From Lytechinus pictus (Eukaryota), in NCBI RefSeq assembly GCF_037042905.1, contig NC_087257.1:124001-188000 (forward strand): a stretch of DNA of 64,000 bases, in the 5' to 3' direction. The translations under genes were made by a program, and so were the position numbers. Each line of letters opens with the position of its first letter. Positions within the stretch are counted from its first letter, which is position 1. Positions 330 to 34,203 of this stretch are shown piece by piece. The notes beneath the pieces are model-generated. The model made no database searches. It saw nothing but the letters and a program-made list of their open reading frames with translations, and was not told the origin of the DNA.

Positions 330-940
330 TGGTAGGTCGTTACCATTCATAGTTAAGATAGCATTTGGGATGCTAATATTGGCATTGTGTTTTTGTAACA
401 AGTCAACGCCAAACAACATCTCATCTGCTATCGGAGCTACATAAATCTTCTCGCTGAGTATATTTGGGTACCCAGCTTGATATTGATAGGCCCTACCACC
501 ATGCCGTCCATTGTCATGTCTCGGCCAGCCCCCTTAAGGATTACACGCTTAAGGATGGGCGGCCGAGGCTGGAGGCATTTGAATAGCCTATCTGATATAA
601 TGGTGACAGCTGCCGCAGTGTCCAAAACAGATGTAATGGGCTCTTTGCCAACTGTCAACCCAACACTCAATGTTGAAGTAGACACAATTCTACAAATGAC
701 TACTTAAATATCTTAATCTTTAACCTCACCAGGAATGTCTGGTGGCCATGGTGGATTCCTCCAAGGAACATCTATTACCTCAGAGAATTTTGGGCTCCCT
801 GGACTTGCTTGTGAGTCCGGTGCCCGCAAGCGGCCATGGTCTTGTTGCATGAGACTGTCCTTTAATGGAATGGAGATGGTGGGGGTGGGGATCTGTGATC
901 GGATCGGGGATTCCCCATCTCCTCCGATCCCTGTCCATTT
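330..940 (-). pseudogene. pol: Pol N-terminus with retroviral-type aspartic protease, in the -1 frame relative to gag, disrupted
   Basis: VLDTAAAVTIIS active site, and after a frameshift IYVAPIADEMLFGVDLL (GxD-type motif); in-frame stops near 705-716. Confidence 0.8.
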
Positions 941-3195
941 ACCTCCTCCTCGAAGGTGACAGCCCTAAGTCGTCTGTTCTGAGCAGGCGATCTCCCTCTG
1001 GGGCAGGCCCTACTGAAATGGCCTTCTTCCCCACAGTTGAAGCAGCCTGCGAAGTTTCGCTGCCGATCGTTTGGTGGAAGGCCCGAAGATGGTCTTCTGC
1101 CTCCTTCTGACCGATCCGGCGTTCTATTAGAGGTATACCTCGGCCTGTCTGATGTACCTGGAGCTCGACCAGAGGTATACTTTGGTCTGTCCGGTGTTCC
1201 CAGAGCTCGGCCGGAGGTATATTTTGGTCTTTCAGGTGTGACAGGGGCACGGCCGGAGGAGTAACTCGGCTGGCCTCTTGACACCGACAAAAGTTCTTTA
1301 GTACTCCGAGACAGATCCGTGATTGCAGCAACCATCGAATCCATCTTGGAGGCCCACATTGCATTCTGAGCCTCCAGAGCACTGATTCTAGCCTCAAGGC
1401 TAGAATTTCCTTTGGTGGCAGCTTCCGGAGGAGACGACTCTTGTACCCTGAGTTCATTCTTATCTTCTCCTACAGAGAGCTGCCTTACCTCGTTTCTCAG
1501 CCTAGGGCCATGCTCCTGCATGGTCTTCTGGGTAAACTGAAACCATTTGTACTTTGTCATGGCTTCATCTAATGTCCCAGGCCGAGAAGTCAGGACATGA
1601 TGCCCTGCATCTTTGTCTTGGGCACCTTGGCAGAACCTTGCCACTACAAGTTCTTGGACGAACTTGTCAGGTAGGCCTACGAAGGCCTGACCTGCAAGGG
1701 TCATAAGCCTATCTGCCCACTTGATGATGTCTTCATCCAAGCGTTGAAAAGCCGATTGAAATTGCATCCGAGTAACTTCCGGCTCCTCCTGGAGAGCGAA
1801 TCACTTCTCCAACTTGGTAACCAAGTCAGAGAAGGCGATATTTGGATTGCTCTCCTGGATAAGGGCCATGAACTTACTGGCTTCGGCCTCCAACGCCAGA
1901 CACAGCTGATATTTCTTGTCTGCATCAGACATGCCATGTCTTTCAGTGTAAAGTTGGAACTTTGAATAGAAGGCCGCCCAGCTTCCTTTGCCGTCGAACG
2001 AAATAGTCTTCGGCAAAGGGGTTGGTCTAGAAGGGGGCCTTCTGTCGTCATATTCCGGTACCACATATCTTGAGGCCGAAGTAAGTCTGGTGACGCGGGG
2101 CGGCTGATTTCTTGTTGGCAGCCCCAAGTACCCAGGACTTACTGATGGCCTTGTGGTGTTTCTATTTTCACTGTATACTGGGCCTCCATGTCCATCTCCT
2201 TGAGGTCCAGCGCCTTGATACACAGGGTTGCTACCCCCATATTGCAAGTCACATGGTCCTTGGGGAGAGGTTTGCGGGGCCACAGTGTTAGGATAGTGTG
2301 GCGGATATCTGCCTCCAGCCCATGGTGGGCAATACCCACCGTAGGCGGCAGCAGGGTTGCAGTATGGAGGAGCTGGCTGTCCAGTTCCTCCGAATGGCAT
2401 CATCTGCATCATCCTAAACATCACGCCATACATTTCCTCGTACTGTGCTTGTGTAAAGTGTGGAACGGCCTGTGGAAAGCTATGTGGAGGTGTCTGGGTA
2501 GTTTGGTTGGTCATTGCTGGTCGGCCACCCTGAGCTCTGGGAGCCTGACCAAGCGACTCTACTTGGGCATGAGGACCAAATTGGAACTGGGGTCCTGGTG
2601 GGGAAGCTACCTGGGCACGAGGACCACATTGGAACTGGGGTCCTGGTGGGGTAACTTGGTGGGGACCCTGTGGTGGGAACAGGCCATCGTTCCATCCTGA
2701 AAATCCAAATTGATTTGCCCAGAGGGACTTAGCCCTATCTTCTGGAGAGGCCTAAGGCTGCTGAGTAGAAGCGCCACCTGGCCTCCCCCCTGTGAAAAAT
2801 GAGGGGGCCTCCCCGTCCTGTGTCTGAGAAGACTGGCCTACAGCACCCCGAGTGCTATGTGCACGGGTGTGCTGTGGCCAAGCCTCAAACGCCTGGCTCA
2901 CGGGGGGCTCCTTTGATGGAATCAGTGGAACGCTCGTAGAAGGCTCATCTCCTTCGGAGCGCACTTCTCTGCGGTCCACATTATGAGCCGTTGTTGTTGG
3001 CTCATAGTCAAAGGCGTAAACTAATAGTTCCGCCTTCGGTATGTAAGGTATTGACAAGAATGTATCCGGAGTAAGGTCGGCCGCCTCCCTCGCGTGTAGA
3101 ATGCGGTTGGCGGTGGCCATACCCACTCCGGGCAGACTCATCAATTCCTCAGACGAACAAAAGTTGATTTTGATTCTTGGTATGTTGCTCGCCAT
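862..3195 (-). pseudogene. gag: Gag-like polyprotein (~778 codons): N-terminal HhH domain, Pro/Gln-rich linker, capsid-like region, CCHC zinc knuckle; two premature stops
   Basis: ORFs 2752-3222, 1801-2514 and 862-1767 are in one frame, separated only by TAG (2752-2754) and TGA (1801-1803). Start ATG at 3195 (aagATGg). Motifs FDGKGSWAAF and CFNCGEEGHFSRAC. Confidence 0.85.
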
Positions 3196-3679
3196 CTTGA
3201 TGTAGAAATTAATCAGTAACAAAAATTAAATTCCAAAATTGAACTGTAATTAACCCAAAATTATCCTGCAGACTACTTTGTCTTGCGGATAAAATCAAAA
3301 TAAATCTGGGACAAAATTAACTTTTTGAAAAAACAATGAAAGAGAATTAACAGAACTAACCTCACAATATCCTGAGAATGTAATCAAATTAAAATCCAGA
3401 GGCTACCTTGCCTAGAAAATAAAATTCCTGTATGATTTAATTCTTAGAAAACAAAAAATGCAAACAATCGAACGCTAACTTGTTAAAAGAAAGAAATGAA
3501 ATATATAGAAATAATTTCTAATAAATAAATTCTTATTATTTATTTATTTTTTTTACAAAAGTTAATATTTACACGTACAATTGGAATAATGAACAGATCT
3601 ATGTACAATTTATCTAAATATATACAAAATTTATTTAATTATACAATTTATAATTAATTGTTTGAATTTGGATTTATAT

Positions 3680-4050
3680 AAAGATCAGCAGCACAGCTCA
3701 CAGCATTCACTCAACGGCAGCACCAGCAACAAAATATATTATACAACAGCAGCAGCAACAATTCAATTACACAACGGCAGCAGCAATAAACAACAAAATA
3801 TTCAATACAGCAGCAGCAGCAACAATACAACAGCACAGCAACAGCAGCAAAATATTCAATACGGCAGCAGCAGCAACAACAAAATAATTAATACAAGATT
3901 GAATTTCCTTATCTCCTGAGACGTAACCAAAAAAAAATATATTCCTAACAATTAAACAACAGCAGCAGCAGCAGCAAATTTCTGGTGTTTTCTCCAAAAA
4001 ACACCCAGAAATATACAAAAATAAATACTAACAACAGCAGCAGCAGCAGC
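3680..4050. repeat. (CAG/CAA)n-rich low-complexity tract in the retroelement leader
   Basis: Repeated cagcagcagcaac motifs. Confidence 0.8.
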
Positions 4051-4700
4051 GCGGCGGTCAAAGGAGAAAAGCAAATTCAGGCTTGTAATAAAATAATCAA
4101 CTCACAACATCAATAATATTCAGCAATACATTCACACCACATACGGTACACAGCTCAGCTCACTCACGTCGCAAATTCACAACACCAACCCAATCAGTAC
4201 ACACGTCAAACACAATCAAACAATCATCAAAAGTCAATCACTCTCGGTGGCCAGAAAAAATTATCCTACGAGGGAAGAGTTCATTTAAATATATGAACAA
4301 ACGGCAAAAATGTGTGGATATATACCCTAAAATAGTACAACGTATAATGTTTTGTCCAAAAAAATTCCGATTAGCTCCTGTCGAGCTAGCCGCTGAATCC
4401 CTTCAAGGCCAGCACGGCAGTGCCGATCGGTAAAAAAATAGAGTATATTTACGGAACTAAAAATCAAACTTTTTCCACCAAAAAATGAAATCTCAAACTA
4501 AAATAATATGTTACTTTTTGTTTTATTTAATATTATGGACGAAACAGAGTCAAACAGCTCAAATTAATAAAAAGCCTAAAATTTTCAAGATGGCGGCGGC
4601 TTTTTTATATTCGGCCACGGCCAACGCAGATTCTGCAACGCCGTTGGCTGTGGCGAAGTAAAGAAAATGTTTTGCCGAAAATAAAATAAAAATCGCTTTA

Positions 4701-4713
4701 ATCCTCGTCGCCA
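4701..4713 (-). promoter_or_regulatory. Primer-binding site complementary to the tRNA-Ser(GCU)-type 3' end
   Basis: Minus strand TGGCGACGAGGAT; plus strand ATCCTCGTCGCCA is a tRNA 3' end with CCA. Duplicate at 6800-6812. Confidence 0.75.
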
Positions 4714-5395
4714 GTAAAGAGGGGGGCCGATAACATAAATAATAATTCACTCACTATACACATATAAACTTCACACCGGGAGAAAGCCTTACCTTATTCT
4801 TGTTATCTATCCAGGCACTGTGACAGCTCTCTTACAACAGGTCCGCTACGACCGGGGGTTGGGTATGGAATGATGTGTTTGAGTCGAGTGTGTACGTATC
4901 TCGCTGTTCGTTCGTCCCGCCGGTGGGTCATGTGACATTGTGTGCTTAATTACGAGTACTACTAATCCCCTAACACCATAGCGATTTGACATGAGAAGGC
5001 CGTCCATGAGAGTCCAGAAAATATAAGATAACCAAAAGATTATTAATTTGGTGCAAACGATCTATCTATGATTTTAAAAAATATTACCCTTTCCATTATT
5101 TTCCGTTATTGTTTTTTATTTTTTGTATGGGGGTTTAAGACCATTTTAGCTATACCATTATGACCTCTGCCATTTTTACCTCTGCCATTATTACCTTTGC
5201 CATTTTTACCTCTGCCATATTTACCTCTGCCATTATTACCTCTGCCATTATTACCTCTGCCATTATTATCTCTGCCATTTTACATCTGCCATTTTTACCT
5301 CTGCCATTTTTACCTCTGCCATTTTTTCCTCTGTCATTTTTACCTCTGCCATTCTTACCTCTGCCATTAATATTATTACCTCTGCCATATTTACA
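4714..5395 (-). repeat. Putative 5' LTR (~680 bp) of the HhH-Gag Gypsy element
   Basis: Minus strand starts TGTAAA at 5395 and ends TTTAC directly before the PBS TGG; the partner 3' LTR is not in the window. Confidence 0.6.
5141..5394. repeat. 15-bp minisatellite (TTACCTCTGCCATTA/T), ~16 copies; duplicate at 7240-7493
   Basis: Direct tandem repeats visible in sequence. Confidence 0.95.
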
Positions 5396-8198
5396 CCGAG
5401 CCTGGGTTAGCGTGCATGATGCAGCTAGCCCGGCGGCCGTGTCGTCGGGTGCGCTCACGCAGAGGTGATGGTCGGACAGCGCTCTGCGGCCGCTTTTCGC
5501 CAAAATTGCAGCTCATTGTAGCAAATCAATGCGATCGGAACGGCGTAACGAAAAATATGCAAAGCTTTGGAGCGGCTTTCTTTGTTCTTTTTCTCAAATA
5601 AGACAAAAATGCTATGCCTTGGAACGGAAATTTGAGTAGAAAAATGGGGGTCCCCTCCGCGGCACATACCCACTATGCATTATACTGAGTGCCCCCCCCC
5701 CCCCCGGAGCATTACGAACCCAAGCCAAATAAGGGCCGTCATCTGTCTATTGACAGGGCGTGTCGCCTGTCGGAGGGGATGCCGCGGCCAGACGAAGTCA
5801 GCGGAGCATCCCTGACAGAATTGGCTATTCATTGGTCTCGTCAGAAACTTGCGACAGGGACTCTTGTTGCCCGTAACTAAATTGAAAAAAATACGGTACC
5901 GGTACATAAATCTACTACATACCTCATCATCCTCAAATAAGCAATGTGTGAGATATTCCTTTCGTACAATCCTCTCAAATATTTTGTCATTTCCTTTTGG
6001 AATTTCCTTATCTCCTGAGACGTAACCAAAAAAAAATATATTCCTAACAATTAAACAACAGCAGCAGCAGCAGCAAATTTCTGGTGTTTTCTCCAAAAAA
6101 CACCCAGAAATATACAAAAATAAATACTAACAACAGCAGCAGCAGCAGCGCGGCGGTCAAAGGAGAAAAGCAAATTCAGGCTTGTAATAAAATAATCAAC
6201 TCACAACATCAATAATATTCAGCAATACATTCACACCACATACGGTACACAGCTCAGCTCACTCACGTCGCAAATTCACAACACCAACCCAATCAGTACA
6301 CACGTCAAACACAATCAAACAATCATCAAAAGTCAATCACTCTCGGTGGCCAGAAAAAATTATCCTACGAGGGAAGAGTTCATTTAAATATATGAACAAA
6401 CGGCAAAAATGTGTGGATATATACCCTAAAATAGTACAACGTATAATGTTTTGTCCAAAAAAATTCCGATTAGCTCCTGTCGAGCTAGCCGCTGAATCCC
6501 TTCAAGGCCAGCACGGCAGTGCCGATCGGTAAAAAAATAGAGTATATTTACGGAACTAAAAATCAAACTTTTTCCACCAAAAAATGAAATCTCAAACTAA
6601 AATAATATGTTACTTTTTGTTTTATTTAATATTATGGACGAAACAGAGTCAAACAGCTCAAATTAATAAAAAGCCTAAAATTTTCAAGATGGCGGCGGCT
6701 TTTTTATATTCGGCCACGGCCAACGCAGATTCTGCAACGCCGTTGGCTGTGGCGAAGTAAAGAAAATGTTTTGCCGAAAATAAAATAAAAATCGCTTTAA
6801 TCCTCGTCGCCAGTAAAGAGGGGGGCCGATAACATAAATAATAATTCACTCACTATACACATATAAACTTCACACCGGGAGAAAGCCTTACCTTATTCTT
6901 GTTATCTATCCAGGCACTGTGACAGCTCTCTTACAACAGGTCCGCTACGACCGGGGGTTGGGTATGGAATGATGTGTTTGAGTCGAGTGTGTACGTATCT
7001 CGCTGTTCGTTCGTCCCGCCGGTGGGTCATGTGACATTGTGTGCTTAATTACGAGTACTACTAATCCCCTAACACCATAGCGATTTGACATGAGAAGGCC
7101 GTCCATGAGAGTCCAGAAAATATAAGATAACCAAAAGATTATTAATTTGGTGCAAACGATCTATCTATGATTTTAAAAAATATTACCCTTTCCATTATTT
7201 TCCGTTATTGTTTTTTATTTTTTGTATGGGGGTTTAAGACCATTTTAGCTATACCATTATGACCTCTGCCATTTTTACCTCTGCCATTATTACCTTTGCC
7301 ATTTTTACCTCTGCCATATTTACCTCTGCCATTATTACCTCTGCCATTATTACCTCTGCCATTATTATCTCTGCCATTTTACATCTGCCATTTTTACCTC
7401 TGCCATTTTTACCTCTGCCATTTTTTCCTCTGTCATTTTTACCTCTGCCATTCTTACCTCTGCCATTAATATTATTACCTCTGCCATATTTACACCGAGC
7501 CTGGGTTAGCGTGCATGATGCAGCTAGCCCGGCGGCCGTGTCGTCGGGTGCGCTCACGCAGAGGTGATGGTCGGACAGCGCTCTGCGGCCGCTTTTCGCC
7601 AAAATTGCAGCTCATTGTAGCAAATCAATGCGATCGGAACGGCGTAACGAAAAATATGCAAAGCTTTGGAGCGGCTTTCTTTGTTCTTTTTCTCAAATAA
7701 GACAAAAATGCTATGCCTTGGAACGGAAATTTGAGTAGAAAAATGGGGGTCCCCTCCGCGGCACATACCCACTATGCATTATACTGAGTGCCCCCCCCCC
7801 CCCCCCCCGGAGCATTACGAACCCAAGCCAAATAAGGGCCGTCATCTGTCTATTGACAGGGCGTGTCGCCTGTCGGAGGGGATGCCGCGGCCAGACGAAG
7901 TCAGCGGAGCATCCCTGACAGAATTGGCTATTCATTGGTCTCGTCAGAAACTTGCGACAGGGACTCTTGTTGCCCGTAACTAAATTGAAAAAAATACGGT
8001 ACCGGTACATAAATCTACTACATACCTCATCATCCTCAAATAAGCAATGTGTGAGATATTCCTTTCGTACAATCCTCTCAAATATTTTGTCATTGTACGA
8101 ATCGAGTATTTGTTCGGCAGCCATGATTTCTTTCAATCCGTGTATACAGTACGCGTATCGTATGTACGGTCGATTTGATCTCGCATGGATTGCATGGA

Positions 8199-8225
8199 GG
8201 TGCCGTGGCCGAGTGGTCTAAGGCG
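8199..8225 (+). repeat. tRNA-derived (A-box) SINE-like head, truncated; second copy at 9594-9620
   Basis: GGTGCCGTGGCCGAGTGGTCTAAGGCG resembles the 5' half of tRNA-Leu/Ser; no B box or 3' half seen. Confidence 0.55.
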
Positions 8226-9403
8226 TCTTGTCAAAAGTGTGTGTGCGTCTTTTCCTTTATATTCTACGGCGAACCCACTGAGCGTGCCATTGGCCATTTT
8301 TCTTTCCTACGGGTCAGTGCGCTTGCCATTCAAGACGCCAGCGTGCCCTTTTGCAGCGAAAATGGAAGTGTGCGCTTTTATCTTTTCTTTTGACACCCCC
8401 CGGTTGGCTCTCCGATAAGATGTTTTTGCATGAGCGCCCTCTATGTCCACGATTTCGGCGTTTTAGGCAAACTATTGAACGCCCGATCTCTAGTCACTGA
8501 TCTGAATATCGTTGTGTCCTTCCGTTGGTGTGCCTAGTCGCATTGGGGTATATATTTTCCAAAGTTACGCTTTCACAATTTCTTTTGATGATTTTTCGTT
8601 TCGGGTTTCAGTATATGACAAATTTCAATTAGATTTAGATTTCATTTCTTTAATAAAACAATTACCGTTAAGATATTGACTTTCTAAAAGTAAGTATTCA
8701 GGCGTGGGTAAGATTTTTTATTTATCACACTGAGCCCACACTGTCAGCATTGTCGGGTGAAAAGGAAAAATATGGAATTGTCCTTAACATCTTTGTAAAC
8801 GAAATGCGAAACCCCTCGCAAAAGATGCAATATATATCATACCTGGGTCCAAAAATGATGGCATTTAAATTTATACAAAAAAATACATACATAACATGCA
8901 AGCGTTTTTTGTGGAAAAAAGGATGAAAACTAAAGGCATCGTTGAAATTCAAATTTGAGCTAAACATAGGCCTATATCTAATTTAGCCAAAGTGCACAAC
9001 AATTTTACTCTTATTATACACATGTTTAAAAATTGACATGTTAGAAAATATATATTCACACATAATACAGATGCCGTGCAAAACAAACGAATAAAGTATC
9101 ATTAATTTGAACTTTAAAAACTAAATTGGATGCTCAAACAGTCATATCGGTCATTGTAGCTTAAATGCACAATTCTTGAATTTCATTGCCCGAAATTCAG
9201 AACAAAAGTACTTTCGTTACTTTGTAAGACCATTACAAACACCTTCACCTTCGAACGACATCAAAACCACTTAAAAAAATAAATATTGGAATTATCAAAG
9301 AAGTTGAGGCAGTCTTGACCATGAATTGAGTTGAGTGTTTATAAAGGAATTATAGCGTCTTCTAATGAATCCCATTCTAAACTTTGAATGACCGATGAAA
9401 AAT
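8221..9403 (+). repeat. ~1.2-kb dispersed repeat block X; second copy at 56180-57404
   Basis: Collinear similarity from aggcgt(c/g)ttgtcaaaagtgtg to accgatgaaaaat. Confidence 0.92.
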
Positions 9404-9881
9404 ATTTTCACCAAAATTGCAGCTCATTGTAGCAGATCAATGCGATCGGAAAGGCGCAACGAAAAATATGCAAAGCTTTGGAGCGGATTTCTTTCTTCTT
9501 CTTTCTCGATAAGAAGAAAATGATATGCTTTGGAGCGTATACAGTACGCGTATCGTATGTACGGTCGATATGATCTCGCATGGATTGCATGGAGGTGACG
9601 TGGCCGAGTGGTCTAAGGCGCCTGGCTAGGCAATCCTGTATTTTAGGGGTCTAAATTATTTTAGGTTGCTAACTTCAGGCAACAGCTCCACGACCATTGT
9701 TAACGGTAGTTCAGTAGTGCGTACGTACGTGCCGGTAATGGCGGGCCGTTAATGCCATTATAAGGGACTACTAGTATACAGCTGCACGCCTATGTAGTAG
9801 ATGTAAAGTTGTATTTACCAATGGGGTATCATGCGATATATAGGGGCCAGGGGGGGGGGGTGGTATAGAATAACGGTATAC

Positions 9882-20619: not shown

Positions 20620-23600
20620 GAAAAATGAAAGCAAAGAATGCAAGAACTATTCGCTGCATCTTCTTTTCCATCTATATTATAATAGATGAAAGAAAGCGAA
20701 CTATTCAAGATGTCATGGTCGAAAACAACCTTTGATTTTCTAACAAAGCGAGGAATGCAATAACTAATCTTTGTATCTTCGCTCCAATCGGTTATTTTGC
20801 TTAATGGCAGAAAGCAAACTACTTAACGATGTCTTTGTCGAAAAAGCTTTTGATTTTTCGAACAAAGCGTGGAATGAAAGAAACTAATCTTTGCATCTTC
20901 GCTCCAATCGGTTACTTCATACTTCCATAGTTTTCATTTTGACCCACATACACGACTCTCTTTATTGGCTTTCTCACTCACACAAATTGTATTACATAGA
21001 ATCCAGTAGATGGCACTAGCTTCAGGTCAACTCCATTCACCCACATGATGATAACATAGAACACTGTACAATATATGTTATTATTATTCATTTTTATTCC
21101 ATTTTAAGTCCAGACATAATACACAAAGCAGATTTTGATACAAAGGTAAAAGTAATCGAAGTTATGTAGTAAACGTATGTCGTAGACAAAATAATTGCTA
21201 ACTGTTATATCTTCGCTTTAACACAATCCATGTATAGACGGAGATGTATAGAGGGAGAAGGGTTTCACTATATGGGGGAAGATCCAAAAATAAGAGGAAA
21301 ATCCATGAAAGCGATGGAAACTCAAGGAGTTGCAAAGGAAGTAATTTGGGGAGATCACAAAGACATGCTGGACAGGTTTGAAAAGGATTGTGTTCCAGGG
21401 ATGGCGTCGATGGAAAATCGTTGCGTAGCGATACCAGGGTGTATCATTTCCAATCACTACGAAACTATGTCAGACCAAGAGAAATTCGAAAAAAATGAAA
21501 GCAAACAATGCAAGAACTATTCACTGCATCTTCTTTTCTATCTATATTATAATATAAATTGAAATGTCATTGAAATGACAGAACATGACGTTCAACTTAA
21601 TTTCTTACAATATGCTGACGATACTCTATTTTTTGTTCAAGATGAAAAATCGTTAAGAGAAATATTAAACGAATTAAAAACCTTTGGTAGAATAGCAGGT
21701 CCAAAGATTAATAAAGAAAAAACAGCATTGATATGGTTAGGAGATATAAGTAAGAGATATGATATTAAAAAATACAATTTATCTTGGACTGTTAAGCCTG
21801 TAAAATACTTAGGTCACTATATTCATTCTGATAATGACAAATCGCTAAACTTAGAGTGGGAAGAAAAATTAATTAAATTGAAAAAGACTCTTGACAGCTG
21901 GTCAAAACGAAACTTAACTATTTTTGGTCGGGTAACTATTCTTAAATGTCTAGCACTTAGTCAAATAATACATTTCAGCATTGTTGATTCCATTCCAACG
22001 AAATGCACGAAAAGTTTGGATAATCTAGTGTTTAGATTCATTTGGAACAGAAAAGTAGAAAAAATTAAAAGATGTACTTTAACAGAAAATTATATTAATG
22101 GTGGAATAAAAATGACTGATGTACACCGCCAAATGCTAAGCTTTCGGTTAAAATGGTTAGGAAGGTTTTTGAATGACAAAACAGAAACATGGAAGAAAAT
22201 GTGTTCATATTGGTTTGACCTCCTAGGAGGTATCTCGTTCCTTTTAAATTGTAATTTCAGTACTAAAACACTGAAAATTATAAATGAAAGAAAAATACCA
22301 ACTTTTTACAAAGAAATACTGGAAGCTTGGGAATTTTTTAGAACTATTACCACATTGAAAGATGTTTGCATGTTTAACCCTAACTGTAATGATATTCGAA
22401 ATCAAATACTTTGGCATAATAAACATATAATATTTGATAACCAGTCTTTATTTTATGAAGACTGGTTTAGAAGTGATATAGTTTACTTAACATATATTAT
22501 TGGGAGAAATGGTTACATACCAATGGAAAACATTCAGAGAAAGATCGATATAAAATGAAGTAAGAATACTGTTATTTTTTTACTACACAAAACTAAAAAA
22601 GGCAATACCAGCAATATGGAAAAAAAAGTTTGAGCGATAATAATGGAATCACTTTCCGGCCTCATGTCTTTATTGTTCCCCAGGTAATGATTGGAAAAAG
22701 TTTGAAATGCATCAGTGATCTGAGGAGTAATACTATATATAAACTGTTCCCCTCAAAAAATACTTTCAACAATAAATGCTGTTAACATTGGGAGAACAAA
22801 CTTGATATTGATGTGAATTGGGCAAATGTATTTAAAAATAATTTTATTCAAGTTAGAGAAAATAAATTACGAGAGTTCAATCTTAAGTTATTATATAATC
22901 TCTTACCAGTAAAAAGTAACCTGTTTAAATGGAATTTTGCAACTGACGATTTGTGTCCAACATGCAAGTTTAAAGAAGATATTATACATGCTTTTATCGA
23001 CTGTGAACTAAACAAATCCTTTTTTGAATATATCAAAATTATTTTGCGAGAAGTTTACAATGTAGAAGTGGAAGTAAACATCAAACATTTGCTTAAAGTT
23101 GAAAGTGATAGTAAAACAAATCTCTTTGTAACTATTACATTTTGGTCAATATATAAAGTTATTTTGGATAGGAACAAATCAGGAACTGAAAAAAGAAGTT
23201 TTGTTTTGAAACATGTATTTATAAAAGAAATTAAAAAACGGATAGAAATGTACAACATTGATAGTAAAAAGACCAAAGAAAAAGATGAACAGCCCAAGGG
23301 CTTGCTACGATTCATGTAAGAACAATCTATGTAACTTGAATATGATTTTGTAATTTATGTAGAAATACTTGTGTTTCATAATTTATGATTAATTGTGTAA
23401 CCTATGATTTAAATGTGATTTACTGTGTAACCCCTGATTTGAATGTGAATAAATCCTCTGATAGAGGCAAAAAAGATCTACTGGATTCTATGTAATACAA
23501 TTTGTGTGAGTCAGAAAGCCAATAAAGAGAGTCGTGTATGTGGGTCAAAATGAAAACTATGCAAGTATGAAGTAACCGATTGGAGCGAAGATGCAAAGAT

Positions 23601-29697: not shown

Positions 29698-32600
29698 TTA
29701 TAGGACTGTAATGCCTAACGCCCACCGTAAAACTCTGAGATTTTTCAATCTCGCTTGCGACAAGTATGCCAAAGGAAAGTGGTCCGTCTGCAACGTGAAC
29801 TTCCTCCCATGTAAGAAGTAGGCAAACTTCTTAACAGCCCACGCTAAGGCAAGACACTCGCGCTCTACTATCGGATACAAGCGTTCGCGATCAAGTAACT
29901 TACGACTGGCAAAACAAATGGGAAACAATTTCTCTTCATGAGTTTGCATCAACACGGCGCCGATGCCAACATCAGATGCATCCGTGCGCACAACGAACTC
30001 GCTATCGATGTCCGGTAATCTAAGTACAGGAAAATGACTCAGCCTGCTCTTAAGTGTTTGGAAAGCGTGTTCATGCGCTTCCTCCCACTTTACTTTCGTA
30101 GCACTATTTTTCTTCGTGAGATCGGATAGAGGGGCAGCAATGGTGGCCATATTTGGGATAAATTTCCGGTAGTACCCCACTAGACCAAGAAATGACCTTA
30201 CCTCCTTCTTTGTTGTCGGTCGGGATGACGACAACACTTGCTTGATCTTCTCTGGCGTAGGTTTCACTTCACCTTGTCCCACGATGTGTCCAAGAAATTC
30301 TACTGAGCTACATGCAGCATGACACTTGCTCGGTCGAGCAGTGAGATGACTTTCCCTTAATCGTGATAGGACTCTCCTTACATCTTCCAGATGCTCTTCC
30401 CATGATGAACTATAGATGAGGATGTCATCTATATAATGAAGGACGTGAGGGAGTTCATCTAACACCTTCCTCATCATTCTGGTAAACACAGCAGGGGCGT
30501 TAACCATGCCAAAGGGAAGTACCAAAAACTCGTACTGGCCATCAGGAGTTACAAACGCCGTTTTCCCACGGTCCTCCTCGACCACTGGTATCTGCCAATA
30601 TCCTTTTGACAAGTCAATTTTAGTGAAGTACTTGGCATCTCCGATATCTGCGATTACCTGATCTATGTTGGGAATTGGTTCGTTGTCGATGACTGTTTTA
30701 GCGTTGATCTTCCTATAGTCAACGCAGAATCTATTCTTCCCGTCCTTTTTCTTGACGATTACCACAGGTGATGCATAGGGCGATGTAGACTTTTCGATTA
30801 CTCCCATCCTAAGCATCGTCTCTACTTCCTCTCTAATCGTCTGTCGTAGTGCTTGAGGTACTGGGTAGGGGCGTGATCTGATGTGTTCGGCCGAAGTCAA
30901 CTCCACCGAATGACTAATGATGTCCGTCTTCCCAGGGACATCGGTCATGACGTCTGTGAATTCCCGGAAGAGCGCCTGCATCTGAGTTCGCATGTCGACG
31001 GGTACGTCGTCGCCAAACTCCACGTCATCGATGCTTTCCGTCTGCTCAACTACTGGGAATATAATGCTCGCAGAACTATCACTCTCGTCACCCTCATCCA
31101 CAATATGGATAGCAGCAACTTGATCAGCTGGGGCTGAAACTTCTTGACTACCATCTTCATGTTCCCTCTCAACATACCTCTTCAGTAGATTGGCGTGATA
31201 AGTCTTCTCTTTTCCATTCACCATCAACTTGTAGTTGTTCCTAGCAACCCTCTTCACGACCTCATAAGGACCTCTCCAATGCATGAGTAGCTTATTGCTG
31301 CTAGTTGGTAGAAGTAGAAGAACTTGATCACCACACTCAAATCTCCTCTCCTTCGCCTTAACGTCGAAGTGTGTCTTGTACTTCGTTGAAGCCTTCGTAA
31401 GCTCCTTCCTAGCGAGCTCACAAGTCGACTCTAGTCGTTCCTGCAAATCAATGACATACTGATAAACTGATTTGACTTCTTCTTCTGGGACTTCTGTAGA
31501 CCATAATTCCTTGAGAATAGTCATGGGTCCCCTGACAGTTCTCCCATACATTAATTCAAATGGAGAATATCCAAGACTCTCATGTGGAACCTCACGATAC
31601 GCAAACAGAAGCGCGGGTAAGTATCTATCCCAATCTTTAGGACATTCCTGACACATCCTACGCAACATTTGCTTAAGGGTCCCATTGAACCGTTCACATG
31701 CTCCATTAGCCATTGGATGGTAAGGAGTAGTGTGAAACTGGCTAACTCCTAACAATTGGGCAGCTTCTTTCATAACTCCCGAAACAAACTGAGTACCATT
31801 ATCAGACAATATTTGATTAGGTACACCTAAGCGTGAAAATATTTCAACTAGGGCCTCTGCCACACGCTCGGCTTCAATTCGAGGTAGGGCTACTGCCTCA
31901 GGGTAGCGAGTAGCTAGATCAACTACAGTCAAGATATACCTATTCCCTCTATCAGTAATGGGATTTAGGGGTCCTATCAAATCTACTGCAATTCGTTTGA
32001 AACAAGTATCTATCAAAGGGGGAATTACGAGTGGCACCTTACCAATCCGTCCTTTAGGCATTGTACGTTGACATGCGTCGCAAGAAGCACAATAACGCTT
32101 GACATCGGATTGTAGTCCAGGCCAGAAGAATTGCGTCAGGATCCTGTCATTCGTCTTCCTTGTCTTCAGATGTCCAGCTAATGCAGAGTCATGAGCTAGT
32201 CGAAGAACTTGAGATCTGAACGGCTTGGGTACCAACAGTTGAGTAAACGTCTTCCCCTGGGTGTTACCTAGTGACCTGTATTCACGGAATAGAAGACCAT
32301 TCTTGAAGTAAAATCTCACTTCGCTATTCTTCCCTACAAGCTTTGACTCACCCTTTTCTGCTAAATCTCTTAGTTTCTTCAGCGTTGCATCTGCCTTCTG
32401 TGCTGCAATAACATCCTCACGGGTTGCGATACACTCCGGCTGCTTTGACGATCCAAGACTCATGAACGGCCGATCCTTTCGTCTCTTCGTCCCTCGAGTC
32501 TCCACTCCTGCCCCTTGTTCCACCTCTTCATTGATAGTTGACTCACTCATCAACTCACTTGGTTGCTCTTGAATGATGACATCATCCTGGTTGTGCGGCT

Positions 32601-34203
32601 GGGACACATCATTCGGTATCTTTTCGTCTGGTACTTGAGTAACGCCTGACAGATCATCTTCTGTGGCCTCCGACGATGAGGGCGTACTCTGCTCTCTTAC
32701 AGTTGTCTCCTTTATGTCATCAGGATCACCGTCACAGGAGGATCTATCCTCCTTGATGGATGACTCGCCGTCACTCGCCTTAGTGTAGGTCCAGTTCTGA
32801 TCCTCATCTCCAGGTTTCCTGGCACCTGTAATATTTCCGATGACTAAATCGTACAACGGGTTATCAACACATAATGCTGTCACATTACCTTGGAAATATG
32901 GGGTACTAACATACAGCCTTGCCTCTGGCATCCGTCTAATTGTTCGGTCAATTAGCATACATAGCTTTGTTTTTCCTGTAAACTGAGCTTTCTTCACTAA
33001 ATCCGTACGAACAATCACGCAACTACAACCTGAATCGCGCAAGACTGTTATTTTCTTGCCATTTATACTGCCATCACAAGTGGGCATATCTGATTCTACT
33101 GTACAAGCCGTATAAAGCAACGGAATTTCATGACCACACTGCAGCTTTACCGTAGCTGAATCGGGACTAACACCTTGCGTTTGCGGTGTTGACATATCAG
33201 GGCATACTCCGACTACGCATGCGTTCACAGATTGCTTACGCGAATCCGAGCTTAACTTGCCTGACCCGTCTCTCGAATTACTGCCCTTTTTGTTTGGACA
33301 CCTGGCCATAAAATGACCTGATTTACCGCAAGTATAGCAAGCTTTTGGATTAGGACTTATGTCGCTTCGGTCCTTACTTTTACCATCTCTCAATTTGCGA
33401 GCATTTTCTTCACGGCGTGCGCGTCTACCGGAGTCAGTTGTAGCTGACACATGCGCACTCCTATATTGCTCAGCTAGCAAAATTAGCTCTGGAACGTTTT
33501 CGGGATTTCTCTCCCGCATAAATACTGACAATGAACGCTCAGAGGTCTCGTAAATATGTTCACGAACTATTACATCCAACAACGCATCAAATGTCTTTTC
33601 TTTGCCGCTCAAATCAATGCAGCGCGTGACGTAACGAATCAAACGGTTAGCATATTGGTAATAAGATTCTTCTCCGCCTTTCTTCGCTTCGCGAAAGCGT
33701 TTCCAATTTCCTTCACTCGTAAGAGCAAAGTATTGCAATAGCATGTTCTTAAGGAGATCGTAATCGGTTGCCTCCTCTGCGCTTATTGAACAATATACAT
33801 CTAGGGCGGGACCTGTCAACAAGTTGCCTAGAGCAGACGCCCAACAATCCTTTGGCCATTTACTCAAAGTCGCGTGCCGTTCAAAACGGTCTATGTACGC
33901 ATCTAGTTCATCCGTTTTGTCTCGGAACGCTGGCATACAGGGGATTTTACTAAGACCCTCAGACGATGTCCCAATAACTTTCCTACTTTCACTTATCTTC
34001 AAATCTAACTCCTTTTGTTTCGTTACCTCTTCTAACCTTCTTTGATCATCTTCCCTCCTAAGTCTTCGTTCATCTCTTTCTATCTGTTCGTTTCTACGCT
34101 TTTCTTCGAGAACCTTGTCACGTTCTTTACAAGCAAATTCTAATAATTCTTTACCCGCTAGTCCACACACTTTACCGAATTCAACAAACTTTTCCAAATC
34201 CAT
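29698..34203 (-). CDS. gag-pol: Gag-Pol polyprotein (capsid/SCAN-like, CCHC, protease, integrase, RT, RNase H); natural end probably 29625
   Basis: CYTCGKSGHFMARC, LRDSG, AHDSALAGH...CASCDAC, DLIGP/SDNG/ERFN integrase core, YIDD, TDAS RNase H. Confidence 0.96.
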   Translation of the reverse strand: MDLEKFVEFGKVCGLAGKELLEFACKERDKVLEEKRRNEQIERDERRLRREDDQRRLEEVTKQKELDLKISESRKVIGTSSEGLSKIPCMPAFRDKTDELDAYIDRFERHATLSKWPKDCWASALGNLLTGPALDVYCSISAEEATDYDLLKNMLLQYFALTSEGNWKRFREAKKGGEESYYQYANRLIRYVTRCIDLSGKEKTFDALLDVIVREHIYETSERSLSVFMRERNPENVPELILLAEQYRSAHVSATTDSGRRARREENARKLRDGKSKDRSDISPNPKACYTCGKSGHFMARCPNKKGSNSRDGSGKLSSDSRKQSVNACVVGVCPDMSTPQTQGVSPDSATVKLQCGHEIPLLYTACTVESDMPTCDGSINGKKITVLRDSGCSCVIVRTDLVKKAQFTGKTKLCMLIDRTIRRMPEARLYVSTPYFQGNVTALCVDNPLYDLVIGNITGARKPGDEDQNWTYTKASDGESSIKEDRSSCDGDPDDIKETTVREQSTPSSSEATEDDLSGVTQVPDEKIPNDVSQPHNQDDVIIQEQPSELMSESTINEEVEQGAGVETRGTKRRKDRPFMSLGSSKQPECIATREDVIAAQKADATLKKLRDLAEKGESKLVGKNSEVRFYFKNGLLFREYRSLGNTQGKTFTQLLVPKPFRSQVLRLAHDSALAGHLKTRKTNDRILTQFFWPGLQSDVKRYCASCDACQRTMPKGRIGKVPLVIPPLIDTCFKRIAVDLIGPLNPITDRGNRYILTVVDLATRYPEAVALPRIEAERVAEALVEIFSRLGVPNQILSDNGTQFVSGVMKEAAQLLGVSQFHTTPYHPMANGACERFNGTLKQMLRRMCQECPKDWDRYLPALLFAYREVPHESLGYSPFELMYGRTVRGPMTILKELWSTEVPEEEVKSVYQYVIDLQERLESTCELARKELTKASTKYKTHFDVKAKERRFECGDQVLLLLPTSSNKLLMHWRGPYEVVKRVARNNYKLMVNGKEKTYHANLLKRYVEREHEDGSQEVSAPADQVAAIHIVDEGDESDSSASIIFPVVEQTESIDDVEFGDDVPVDMRTQMQALFREFTDVMTDVPGKTDIISHSVELTSAEHIRSRPYPVPQALRQTIREEVETMLRMGVIEKSTSPYASPVVIVKKKDGKNRFCVDYRKINAKTVIDNEPIPNIDQVIADIGDAKYFTKIDLSKGYWQIPVVEEDRGKTAFVTPDGQYEFLVLPFGMVNAPAVFTRMMRKVLDELPHVLHYIDDILIYSSSWEEHLEDVRRVLSRLRESHLTARPSKCHAACSSVEFLGHIVGQGEVKPTPEKIKQVLSSSRPTTKKEVRSFLGLVGYYRKFIPNMATIAAPLSDLTKKNSATKVKWEEAHEHAFQTLKSRLSHFPVLRLPDIDSEFVVRTDASDVGIGAVLMQTHEEKLFPICFASRKLLDRERLYPIVERECLALAWAVKKFAYFLHGRKFTLQTDHFPLAYLSQARLKNLRVLRWALGITVL

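What the first reader, a model, noticed from the sequence alone, without database searches (positions are those of the whole stretch)
3000..3195. Gypsy Gag that begins with a ComEA-like helix-hairpin-helix DNA-binding domain
Seen: the first ~65 aa of the reconstructed Gag read MASNIPRIKINFCSSEELMSLPGVGMATANRILHAR...FLSIPYI. They are in frame with the capsid-like and CCHC regions, interrupted only by two point stops. Established: I-N-x-A/C-S-x-E-E-L-x-x-L-P-G-I/V-G-x-x-x-A-x-x-I-x-x-x-R is the HhH_3/ComEA signature, a non-sequence-specific dsDNA-binding module of bacterial competence proteins and some repair proteins. It is not part of the textbook Gag. Inference: this Gypsy lineage has an HhH-Gag that could bind cDNA, tether the particle to chromatin, or shield or package DNA. 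I know of no description of such a lineage but cannot search to confirm that.
Basis: partly seen in the sequence, partly recalled or inferred. Interest (0 to 1): 0.82.

Follow-up and report, generated by a model that had tools for sequence, protein, structure and literature searches.

The report
Retrotransposon Gag with ComEA-like HhH domain
A dead copy of a sea-urchin Ty3/Gypsy retrotransposon encodes a capsid protein (Gag) that begins with a bacterial-competence-type helix-hairpin-helix domain; intact relatives in sea urchins and mussels keep it as well conserved as the capsid, yet I found no paper describing it.

Summary
On the minus strand, 3195→865 is one 777-codon frame broken only by a TAG (2752-2754) and a TGA (1801-1803). 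Its first ~65 codons pass Pfam's own thresholds for HHH_3 and HHH. An AlphaFold model of them matches ComEA best. The C-terminal piece has a CCHC knuckle.

The domain is neither chance nor a one-off fusion. At least 29 Gags that share the capsid domain carry the same N-terminal HhH, many as single intact ORFs. Named sources are Lytechinus pictus and two Mytilus species; two records are labelled as bacterial MAGs and are probably host contigs. HhH conservation equals the capsid's (0.49 vs 0.46 pairwise identity; linker 0.12). Window versus an L. pictus sibling gives dN/dS 0.23 for the HhH.

Siblings supply the Gypsy Pol order PR-RT-RH-INT, a C-terminal PHD finger and, in three lineages, a third ORF with a TatD-type DNase domain.

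DNA binding is untested. The domain is net acidic and its second hairpin is degenerate. My preferred reading (about 0.45) is an outward-facing DNA/chromatin tether on a long disordered linker.

Nine full-text searches, five aimed at the HhH domain, found no description. Verdict: a new variant of a known kind, moderately high interest.

The parts
3001..3195 (-). Codons 1-65 of Gag: ComEA-type (HhH)2 domain
   Evidence: Pfam HHH_3 29.8 bits and HHH 29.1 bits, both above cut-off. AlphaFold helices 15-19, 26-38, 43-47, 55-61 with pLDDT ~88. Top fold hit is ComEA. Conserved in 17 aligned relatives, with invariant N11, C13, L18, G25, R36, D63.
3121..3135 (-). First hairpin L-P-G-V-G (codons 21-25), a canonical HhH hairpin
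   Evidence: Read from the sequence. The column is P-G-[IV]-G in most relatives and P-S-V-G in the mussel group.
3040..3051 (-). Second, degenerate hairpin I-P-Y-I (codons 49-52)
   Evidence: Alignment A1: mostly IPYI/IPHI, but IPGI or ITGV in a few relatives. It lies between helices 43-47 and 55-61 of the model.
2752..2754 (-). In-frame TAG, first break of the Gag frame
   Evidence: A 91% identical L. pictus protein reads through this place with a sense codon.
2023..3000 (-). Long low-complexity linker (P/Q/G/Y-rich) between the HhH and the capsid; holds a 48-nt tandem repeat at 2559-2654
   Evidence: No Pfam match. Repeat D7. The equivalent segment of intact P0024 has pLDDT ~30. Pairwise identity among relatives is 0.12.
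1477..2022 (-). Capsid-like (CA) domain, codons 392-573, interrupted by the TGA
   Evidence: An HMM of the relatives' CA scores 214.5 bits on the X-masked read-through. Relatives hit Retrotrans_gag, Ty3_capsid and PNMA. The P0024 model matches PNMA2, Arc, dArc1 and Ty3 capsids.
1801..1803 (-). In-frame TGA, second break of the Gag frame
1000..1047 (-). CCHC zinc knuckle
   Evidence: Pfam zf-CCHC 29.3 bits, cut-off 20.8.
862..864 (-). Gag stop codon TAA
440..685 (-). Start of Pol: aspartic-protease-like ORF in another frame. It decays through a frameshift and stops downstream, and the element runs off the window at base 1.
   Evidence: Weak Pfam Asp_protease_2 / gag-asp_proteas / RVP hits, all below cut-off. 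Three-frame translation. 81% identical to the protease of sibling L003, which itself hits the protease families at 27.3 bits, just under the 28.2 cut-off.
3196..4761 (-). 5' leader of the element, shared with the L. pictus sibling
   Evidence: blastn window vs L003: 3223-3325 at 98%, 3331-4140 at 83%, 4175-4761 at 82%. L003 has an extra 1.56 kb of tandem repeats in this stretch.
4707..4944 (-). Weak remnant of the 147-nt direct repeat that flanks the sibling element; a candidate 5' terminus, not proven to be an LTR
   Evidence: L003 7843-7989 and 21726-21871 are 97% identical direct repeats 13.9 kb apart. A sensitive blastn places their homologue at window 4707-4872 (67%) and 4915-4944 (87%).

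Best explanation
Shown: window 3195→862 (minus strand) is the Gag gene of a dead copy of a Ty3/Gypsy-type retrotransposon. It has two in-frame stops, and the protease downstream is decayed. The order of parts is an N-terminal ComEA-type (HhH)2 domain of about 65 residues, a long disordered P/Q/G/Y-rich linker, a two-lobed capsid domain of the Ty3/Arc/PNMA type, a helical segment, and a CCHC zinc knuckle. The HhH domain is an ancestral part of Gag under purifying selection in a whole lineage found in sea urchins and mussels. Several members of that lineage also carry a PHD finger at the end of integrase and a third ORF with a TatD-type DNase domain.

Inferred mechanism (about 0.45): in Ty3, Arc and retroviral lattices the N-terminal side of CA faces outwards and NC faces inwards (my knowledge of the Ty3 and Arc capsid structures, not tested here). 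If the same holds here, the HhH modules sit on flexible tethers on the outside of the particle. One canonical G-h-G hairpin per Gag binds the DNA backbone weakly and without sequence preference. Many copies per particle would add avidity. This would hold the particle or pre-integration complex on chromosomal DNA, working like MLV p12 or the foamy-virus Gag chromatin-binding site. The PHD-integrase would then choose the chromatin state.
For: Domain identity: Pfam HHH_3 and HHH above cut-off. Family profile against the PDB: EEPD1 1.4e-10, ComEA 9.3e-9 and 1.5e-8. AlphaFold pLDDT 79 overall and ~88 in the core. Foldseek top hits are ComEA 8dss and 2duy.

Part of Gag: intact single ORFs with HhH, linker, CA and CCHC (P0024, P0099, P0102, P0123, P0146, P0169). 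The model of P0024 shows exactly these modules, and its CA matches PNMA2, Arc and Ty3 capsids.

Lineage: 29 of 46 rows of the CA tree carry the HhH. They lie on both sides of the midpoint root, and HhH-less rows are nested among them.

Selection: HhH pairwise identity 0.49, CA 0.46, linker 0.12. Window vs L003 gives dN/dS 0.23 in the HhH (6 synonymous and 5 non-synonymous changes, binomial P 0.022), 0.17 in CA and 0.26 overall. All amino-acid differences inside three 90% clusters fall outside the HhH.

Gypsy identity and chromatin/DNA context: Pol is PR-RT-RH-INT-PHD, followed by a TatD ORF.

No Gly at position 2 in any member, so the domain is not a myristoylated MA-like membrane anchor.
Against: No binding assay exists. 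The HhH domains are net acidic (-7 to +1 over 68 residues), whereas I would expect a non-specific DNA binder to be basic; that expectation is from memory and no reference domain was scored. The second hairpin lacks the G-h-G motif in most members. The same fold occurs in PsbU, which does not bind DNA; PsbU chains are hits 3-5 and 7. The outward orientation of the N-terminus is carried over from other capsids and was not tested for this family. The window copy itself is non-functional.
Confidence: 0.45

Rival explanations
1. The HhH domain is a protein-protein or structural module that binds no nucleic acid. It could recruit a host factor, bind the element's own ORF3/TatD protein or integrase, or help Gag multimerise.
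For: Net acidic charge of the domain across the family. A degenerate second hairpin. HHH_3-fold proteins without DNA binding exist: PsbU is among the fold hits. From my own knowledge, HhH pairs mediate dimerisation in XPF/ERCC1. The HhH-Gag co-occurs with a TatD ORF in three lineages.
Against: The first hairpin keeps the canonical P-G-[IV]-G and the R of the 'RI...R' helix. These are the DNA-contact elements of the motif. The closest sequence and structure matches are all DNA-binding proteins: ComEA, EEPD1, Pol X, RuvA.
Confidence: 0.25
2. The HhH binds the element's own nucleic acid, either the reverse-transcribed cDNA or the genomic RNA. It would help packaging, reverse transcription or protection of the cDNA, complementing the CCHC knuckle at the other end of Gag.
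For: Same domain evidence as above. From my own knowledge, HhH motifs bind both DNA and structured RNA in some proteins, such as ribosomal S13 and Tex/Spt6.
Against: By analogy with the Ty3, Arc and retroviral lattices, the N-terminus is outside the shell and the nucleic acid inside with NC. This is inferred, not tested. A 200-700-residue disordered linker fits an outward tether better than an internal packaging role. Gag already has a CCHC knuckle for the nucleic acid.
Confidence: 0.2
3. The HhH is not really part of Gag. It would be a chance match, a fragment captured only in this copy, an upstream ORF fused by the reader's reconstruction, or bacterial contamination, since two relatives are labelled as bacterial MAG proteins.
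For: The window copy is broken. Some relatives in NCBI are labelled Sedimenticola or Thiodiazotropha MAG. The Pfam match covers only half of the HHH_3 profile in the window.
Against: Intact single ORFs join the HhH to CA and CCHC in many divergent relatives. They are followed by eukaryote-type Pol genes on the same contigs. One sibling lies on a 44-Mb L. pictus chromosome. dN/dS is below 1. The MAG labels are best explained as host contigs binned by mistake.
Confidence: 0.03

Closest known systems
ComEA C-terminal DNA-binding domain (Pfam HHH_3, PF12836; PDB 8dss, 2duy)
   Same: Same ~65-residue (HhH)2 fold and the same signature: I-N-x-A/C-S, E-L-x-x-L-P-G-I-G, A-x-x-I-x-x-x-R. It is the best structural match.
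   Different: This is not a ComEA protein. It scores 18 bits against the comEA family cut-off of 152. It has no membrane anchor, SLBB or oligomerisation domain, and it is eukaryotic. It has an invariant Cys where ComEA has Ala or Thr, its second hairpin is degenerate and it is net acidic.
EEPD1 (animal protein with two HhH domains and an EEP nuclease domain; PDB 9yi2)
   Same: It is the best sequence-profile hit among solved structures (1.4e-10, both of its HhH domains matched). It shows that ComEA-type HhH domains already exist in animal proteins and is a possible donor.
   Different: Gag has a single HhH domain and no EEP nuclease domain. No evidence here decides between a host and a bacterial origin: single-domain scores are 24 bits for EEPD1 and 26-30 bits for ComEA.
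Chromatin tethers in retroviral Gag: MLV p12 and the foamy-virus Gag chromatin-binding sequence (from my own knowledge)
   Same: The proposed working principle is the same: a Gag-borne module that holds the capsid or pre-integration complex on chromosomes.
   Different: Those are short peptide motifs that bind nucleosomes or histones, not folded DNA-binding domains. There is no homology, and the function here is untested.
Retrotransposons that captured chromatin or DNA readers: chromoviruses (chromodomain on integrase), PHD-bearing elements, CopiaMBD (PMC6673714)
   Same: The evolutionary theme is the same: an accessory DNA/chromatin-reading domain fixed in a retrotransposon lineage. Siblings here also have a PHD on integrase.
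   Different: In those cases the domain sits on Pol/integrase, or in a Copia polyprotein. Here it is the N-terminus of a Gypsy Gag, and the domain type (HhH) is different.
Ty3 Gag and its domesticated relatives Arc and PNMA
   Same: The same two-lobed CA fold and a CCHC knuckle.
   Different: From my own knowledge, none of them carries an N-terminal HhH domain or a linker this long.

Membership tests
Pfam HHH_3 (PF12836) helix-hairpin-helix domain | Score at or above the curated gathering threshold (27 bits) | tested here: met
   29.8 bits, E 6.4e-7, on the window's first piece. Relatives P0003 (28.9), P0099 (27.6) and P0175 (29.8) also pass; P0024 (24.4) and P0146 (26.2) fall just below.
Pfam HHH_3 (PF12836) helix-hairpin-helix domain | Two consecutive HhH motifs packed as one (HhH)2 globule | tested here: met
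   The AlphaFold model has helices 15-19, 26-38, 43-47 and 55-61. It superposes on ComEA over 66 columns at rmsd 2.2 A, TMq 0.68. This rests on a model, not an experiment.
Pfam HHH_3 (PF12836) helix-hairpin-helix domain | Canonical G-h-G hairpin in both motifs | tested here: inconclusive
   The first hairpin is canonical (P-G-V-G). The second reads I-P-Y-I in the window and most relatives, and P-G-I or T-G-V in a few.
Pfam HHH_3 (PF12836) helix-hairpin-helix domain | Sequence-independent binding of the DNA backbone | not testable with these tools
   Needs EMSA or anisotropy. Net charge of -3 in the window and -7 to +1 in relatives is a caveat.
ComEA competence protein (NCBIfam TIGR01259) | Full-length match above the family cut-off (152 bits), with the N-terminal anchor/oligomerisation parts and a bacterial competence context | tested here: not met
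   18.3 bits only, confined to the HhH. The protein is a eukaryotic retrotransposon Gag. It shares the domain but is not a member of the family.
EEPD1 family | Two HhH domains followed by an endonuclease/exonuclease/phosphatase domain | tested here: not met
   There is one HhH domain and no EEP domain in any piece or relative.
Ty3/Gypsy (Metaviridae-type) LTR retrotransposon | Gag with a retroviral-type two-lobed CA and a CCHC knuckle | tested here: met
   zf-CCHC in the window. CA HMM scores 214.5 bits on the window. Relatives hit Retrotrans_gag and Ty3_capsid above cut-off. Fold hits are PNMA2, Arc and Ty3.
Ty3/Gypsy (Metaviridae-type) LTR retrotransposon | Pol order PR-RT-RNaseH-INT | tested here: met
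   Met in siblings L001, L002 and L003 and on the contigs of P0169, P0211 and P0187. The window itself holds only a decayed protease start.
Ty3/Gypsy (Metaviridae-type) LTR retrotransposon | Long terminal repeats flanking the element, with a primer-binding site | tested here: inconclusive
   The window holds only the 5' part. No terminal repeats were found in L001 or L002. L003 has only 147-nt direct repeats 13.9 kb apart. No primer-binding site was identified.

The most novel reading that the evidence does not exclude
This is an undescribed, widespread lineage of marine-invertebrate Ty3/Gypsy elements that carries three DNA/chromatin modules at once: an HhH domain on Gag, a PHD finger on integrase and a TatD-type nuclease in a third ORF. 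In this reading the capsid protein itself binds DNA, and the HhH and the TatD nuclease act together in a step unknown in other retroelements, such as docking of particles on chromosomal DNA, processing of DNA ends, or attack on host or competitor DNA.
Probability: 0.25. Interest if true: 0.8.

Novelty: new variant of a known kind. Interest (0 to 1): 0.62.

Why it matters
Gag proteins of LTR retroelements are usually described as membrane- or matrix-like part, capsid and nucleocapsid. Accessory reader domains are known mainly on integrase (chromodomain, PHD), and an MBD is known in a Copia Pol polyprotein.

A folded, conserved DNA-binding-type domain at the outward end of Gag would be a new way for a retroelement to deal with DNA. 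It would offer a natural test case for how capsids reach and hold chromatin. It would also be a new example of capture of a bacterial- or host-type module by a mobile element.

There is a practical point too. These proteins are being mis-annotated: as 'trithorax group protein osa-like' in L. pictus, and as a 'helix-hairpin-helix domain-containing protein' of bacterial MAGs. Recognising the family would fix such errors and flag host contamination in symbiont bins.

Tried and rejected
- **Word-indexed search on the HhH:** a search with the HhH region of P0024 found only itself and one relative. The HMMER scan of representatives and the search on the CA region were the productive routes.
- **Other copies in the window:** none was found for any Gag piece.
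- **LTRs:** no terminal repeats in L001 or L002 at two stringencies. L003 has only a 147-nt pair. I therefore do not claim LTRs.
- **Third ORF of mussel-type L002:** it is cut by the contig end, has no Pfam match and no similarity to the L003 TatD ORF, so it is undecided. L001 has at most a weak remnant (E 0.002).
- **Missing DNA:** the contigs of P0169, P0211, P0187 and P0219 returned no DNA. dN/dS between intact lineages could not be computed, so window vs L003 was used instead.
- **Literature:** nine full-text searches, five of them aimed at the HhH domain. The 'ComEA' search was swamped by unrelated word matches. The one paper holding helix-hairpin-helix, LTR retrotransposon and Gag (Cer1 CERV, PMC10309623) means a plain helical hairpin. 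PHD in retrotransposons is already known.
- **RNA features:** no tRNA genes and no Rfam match at gathering thresholds in the window.
- **Origin of the domain:** the scores do not discriminate between a host EEPD1-like and a bacterial ComEA-like donor, and 60 residues are too few for a tree.
- **Stop-repaired translation:** Pieces were searched separately, and X was used at the breaks in scripts.
Full report
**1. The observation**

Read on the minus strand, window 3195→2755 encodes 147 residues. They begin M-A-S-N-I-P-R-I-K-I-N-F-C-S-S-E-E-L-M-S-L-P-G-V-G-M-A-T-A-N-R-I-L-H-A-R.
- The same frame continues through a TAG (2752-2754), 316 codons (2751→1804), a TGA (1801-1803) and 312 codons (1800→865), ending at TAA 862-864.
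- There is no frameshift.
- The rules for this window forbid reading through the stops with real letters. The three pieces were therefore searched apart, and X was placed at the breaks in scripts.

**2. Is it an HhH?**

Sequence evidence:
- Pfam on the first piece gives HHH_3 at 29.8 bits (cut-off 27) and HHH at 29.1 bits (cut-off 24). The last piece gives zf-CCHC at 29.3 bits (cut-off 20.8).
- A profile of 17 aligned N-termini (alignment A1) was searched against all PDB sequences. It finds EEPD1 (1.4e-10, both of its HhH domains), two ComEA entries (9.3e-9 and 1.5e-8), then Pol X, topoisomerase V and RuvA.

Structure evidence:
- AlphaFold on A1, with the window sequence as target, gives pLDDT about 88 over residues 10-60. 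The helices are 15-19, 26-38, 43-47 and 55-61.
- Foldseek's best PDB hits are ComEA of Geobacillus (8dss: prob 1.00, TMq 0.68, rmsd 2.2 A, 66 columns, 30% identity) and the Thermus ComEA-related protein 2duy. PsbU and RuvA follow.

So the fold and signature are those of the ComEA-type (HhH)2 domain. It is not a ComEA protein: it scores 18 bits against the comEA family cut-off of 152.

Particulars of this version:
- an invariant Cys where ComEA has Ala or Thr (I-N-x-C);
- a canonical first hairpin (P-G-[IV]-G);
- a second hairpin that is mostly I-P-Y-I, so degenerate.

**3. Is it part of Gag?**

A full HMMER scan of 1.84 billion representative proteins with the first piece gave 231 hits. Most are bacterial multi-HhH proteins. 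A distinct set matches once, at the very N-terminus of long proteins.
- P0024 (606 aa), P0099 (1054), P0102 (758), P0123 (581), P0146 (667) and P0169 (622) are single intact ORFs. Each runs HhH, long variable linker, capsid and CCHC.
- Their capsid parts hit Retrotrans_gag, Ty3_capsid or PNMA.
- The AlphaFold model of P0024 shows the HhH at 1-60 (pLDDT 85-90) and disorder at 64-269 (pLDDT about 30). A nine-helix domain follows at 270-435 (pLDDT about 90), then a long helix at 487-544 and the knuckle.
- The nine-helix domain matches PNMA2, Arc, dArc1 and Ty3 capsids.
- The ORFs start 1-12 residues before the HhH, and none has Gly at position 2. The domain is therefore the true N-terminus and not a myristoylated matrix.

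**4. The window's own family**

The closest named relative is Lytechinus pictus.
- P0001 is XP_063960057, annotated 'trithorax group protein osa-like'. It is 91% identical to the linker.
- Its locus L003 lies on a 44-Mb chromosome. It is 89-93% identical to the window at DNA level from the 5' leader through Gag into the protease.
- L003 has the HhH at the start of the same frame, and its own frameshift further on.

Window against L003 by Nei-Gojobori:

| Region | dN/dS | Note |
|---|---|---|
| HhH (65 codons) | 0.23 | 6 synonymous, 5 non-synonymous; binomial P 0.022 |
| Capsid | 0.17 | |
| Linker | 0.43 | |
| Overall | 0.26 | P 5e-17 |

Most divergence between the two dead copies therefore arose while their lineages were under selection, the HhH included.

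**5. The lineage**

A search with the capsid region of P0024 found 42 proteins.
- With an HMM of A1, the HhH is found at the N-terminus of 29 of the 46 rows that enter the capsid tree.
- On that tree the HhH-bearing rows lie on both sides of the midpoint root. Rows without it are nested next to rows with it: P0204 by P0205, P0186/P0193/P0194 by P0199, and P0214-P0220 by P0213.
- Several of the HhH-less rows are plainly truncated gene models.
- The simplest reading is that the HhH is ancestral to the whole sampled family and was lost or cut off secondarily.
- Pairwise identity among eight full-length Gags is 0.49 in the HhH, 0.46 in the capsid and 0.12 in the linker.

Named sources are L. pictus, Mytilus coruscus and M. 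edulis. Two proteins are labelled as bacterial MAGs (Sedimenticola, Candidatus Thiodiazotropha) and are most likely host contigs binned by mistake. Other members sit in many copies on megabase contigs without taxon names.

**6. What kind of element**

- Next to the intact Gags lie Pol genes with the order protease, RT, RNase H, integrase (H2C2 + rve). This is the Ty3/Gypsy order. All but the P0187 contig add a PHD finger at the C-terminus.
- In three separate lineages a third ORF with a TatD_DNase match follows Pol directly (the P0169 contig, the P0211 contig and L003).
- The window ends inside a decayed protease, so none of this is in the window.
- LTRs were not established.

**7. How it may work**

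Shown: the fold, the position, the conservation and the selection. Everything else in this section is inferred.
- In Ty3, Arc and retroviral lattices the N-terminal side of CA faces outwards and NC faces inwards (my knowledge of those structures). The HhH on its 200-700-residue disordered linker would then be displayed outside the particle.
- The first hairpin and the conserved Arg are the DNA-backbone-contacting elements of the motif, and many copies per particle would give avidity.
- I therefore favour a sequence-independent tether to chromosomal DNA, working like MLV p12 or the foamy-virus Gag chromatin-binding site (about 0.45).
- Against this: the domains are net acidic (-7 to +1), the second hairpin is degenerate, and PsbU has this fold without binding DNA.
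- Rivals: a protein-protein adaptor, perhaps for the ORF3 or integrase proteins (0.25); binding of the element's own cDNA or RNA (0.2); artefact (0.03, rejected by sections 3-5).

**8. Novelty**

- Nine full-text searches, five of them aimed at the HhH domain, found no paper describing an HhH domain in a Gag or a TatD ORF in an LTR retrotransposon.
- The single paper holding the three terms helix-hairpin-helix, LTR retrotransposon and Gag is about something else.
- PHD fingers in retrotransposons are known.
- Precomputed Pfam tags and one automatic NCBI name already mark these proteins as HhH-containing. The signal is visible in databases but, as far as I could search, undescribed.
- Subscription journals and Repbase notes were not searchable.
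- I rate it a new variant of a known kind, with moderately high interest.

Noticed in passing
L003:19552-20943 (+); also the contigs of P0169 and P0211 (no DNA held): A third ORF with a TatD_DNase Pfam match (45.4 bits in L003) follows Pol directly in three divergent HhH-Gag lineages. It is 733 and 784 aa on the intact contigs. I found no paper on TatD in LTR retrotransposons.
   Followed up: partly
L001:2438-6637, L002:2718-7133; L003 just upstream of 19552: Pol of the siblings ends in a PHD finger after the integrase (Pfam 34.8 and 32.3 bits). L003 shows a PHD-like Cys/His pattern right before its Pol stop, seen in translation only. PHD in retrotransposons is known.
   Followed up: partly
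window 29698-34203 (-): An uninterrupted 1501-aa ORF of another retroelement with the order CCHC knuckle, integrase (H2C2, rve), RT, RNase H. The integrase lies before the RT, an order I recall for the Gmr1-like Gypsy group of deuterostomes. It has no HhH.
   Followed up: partly
window 3901-6000 and 6000-8100: A 2.1-kb tandem duplication. Sampled 300-nt stretches are 100% identical. It includes the outer 5' leader and candidate terminus of the HhH element plus flank. It could be a recent duplication or an assembly artefact.
   Followed up: no
window 5090-5413 and 7189-7512: A minisatellite of 15-nt units, present once in each copy of the duplication.
   Followed up: no
window 2559-2654 (-): A 48-nt tandem repeat inside the Gag linker encodes a P-G-P-Q-F-Q-F-G-P-type unit. 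The window has two copies; the L. pictus protein P0001 shows more.
   Followed up: no
window 8142-8228 and 9537-9623: An 87-nt repeat (97% identical) containing a tRNA-like box (GTGGCCGAGTGGTCTAAGGCG). ARAGORN found no tRNA genes and Rfam nothing at gathering thresholds, so it may be a tRNA-derived SINE fragment.
   Followed up: partly
P0001 (XP_063960057.1), P0191 (MES9883358.1), P0198 (MEW8548560.1): Public annotation errors. The L. pictus 'trithorax group protein osa-like' model is the linker of this Gag. Two 'MAG' proteins assigned to Sedimenticola and Candidatus Thiodiazotropha are eukaryotic HhH-Gags, which suggests host contigs in symbiont bins.
   Followed up: partly
P0214-P0220; contig of P0219: A tight clade of HhH-less Gag-like proteins with a different N-terminus, sister to HhH-bearing P0213. 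On the P0219 contig no Pol lies next to it. It may be a non-autonomous or domesticated derivative.
   Followed up: no
window 21575-22558 (+): A 327-aa ORF with a partial RT match (RVT_1, 40 bits), another retroelement fragment.
   Followed up: no
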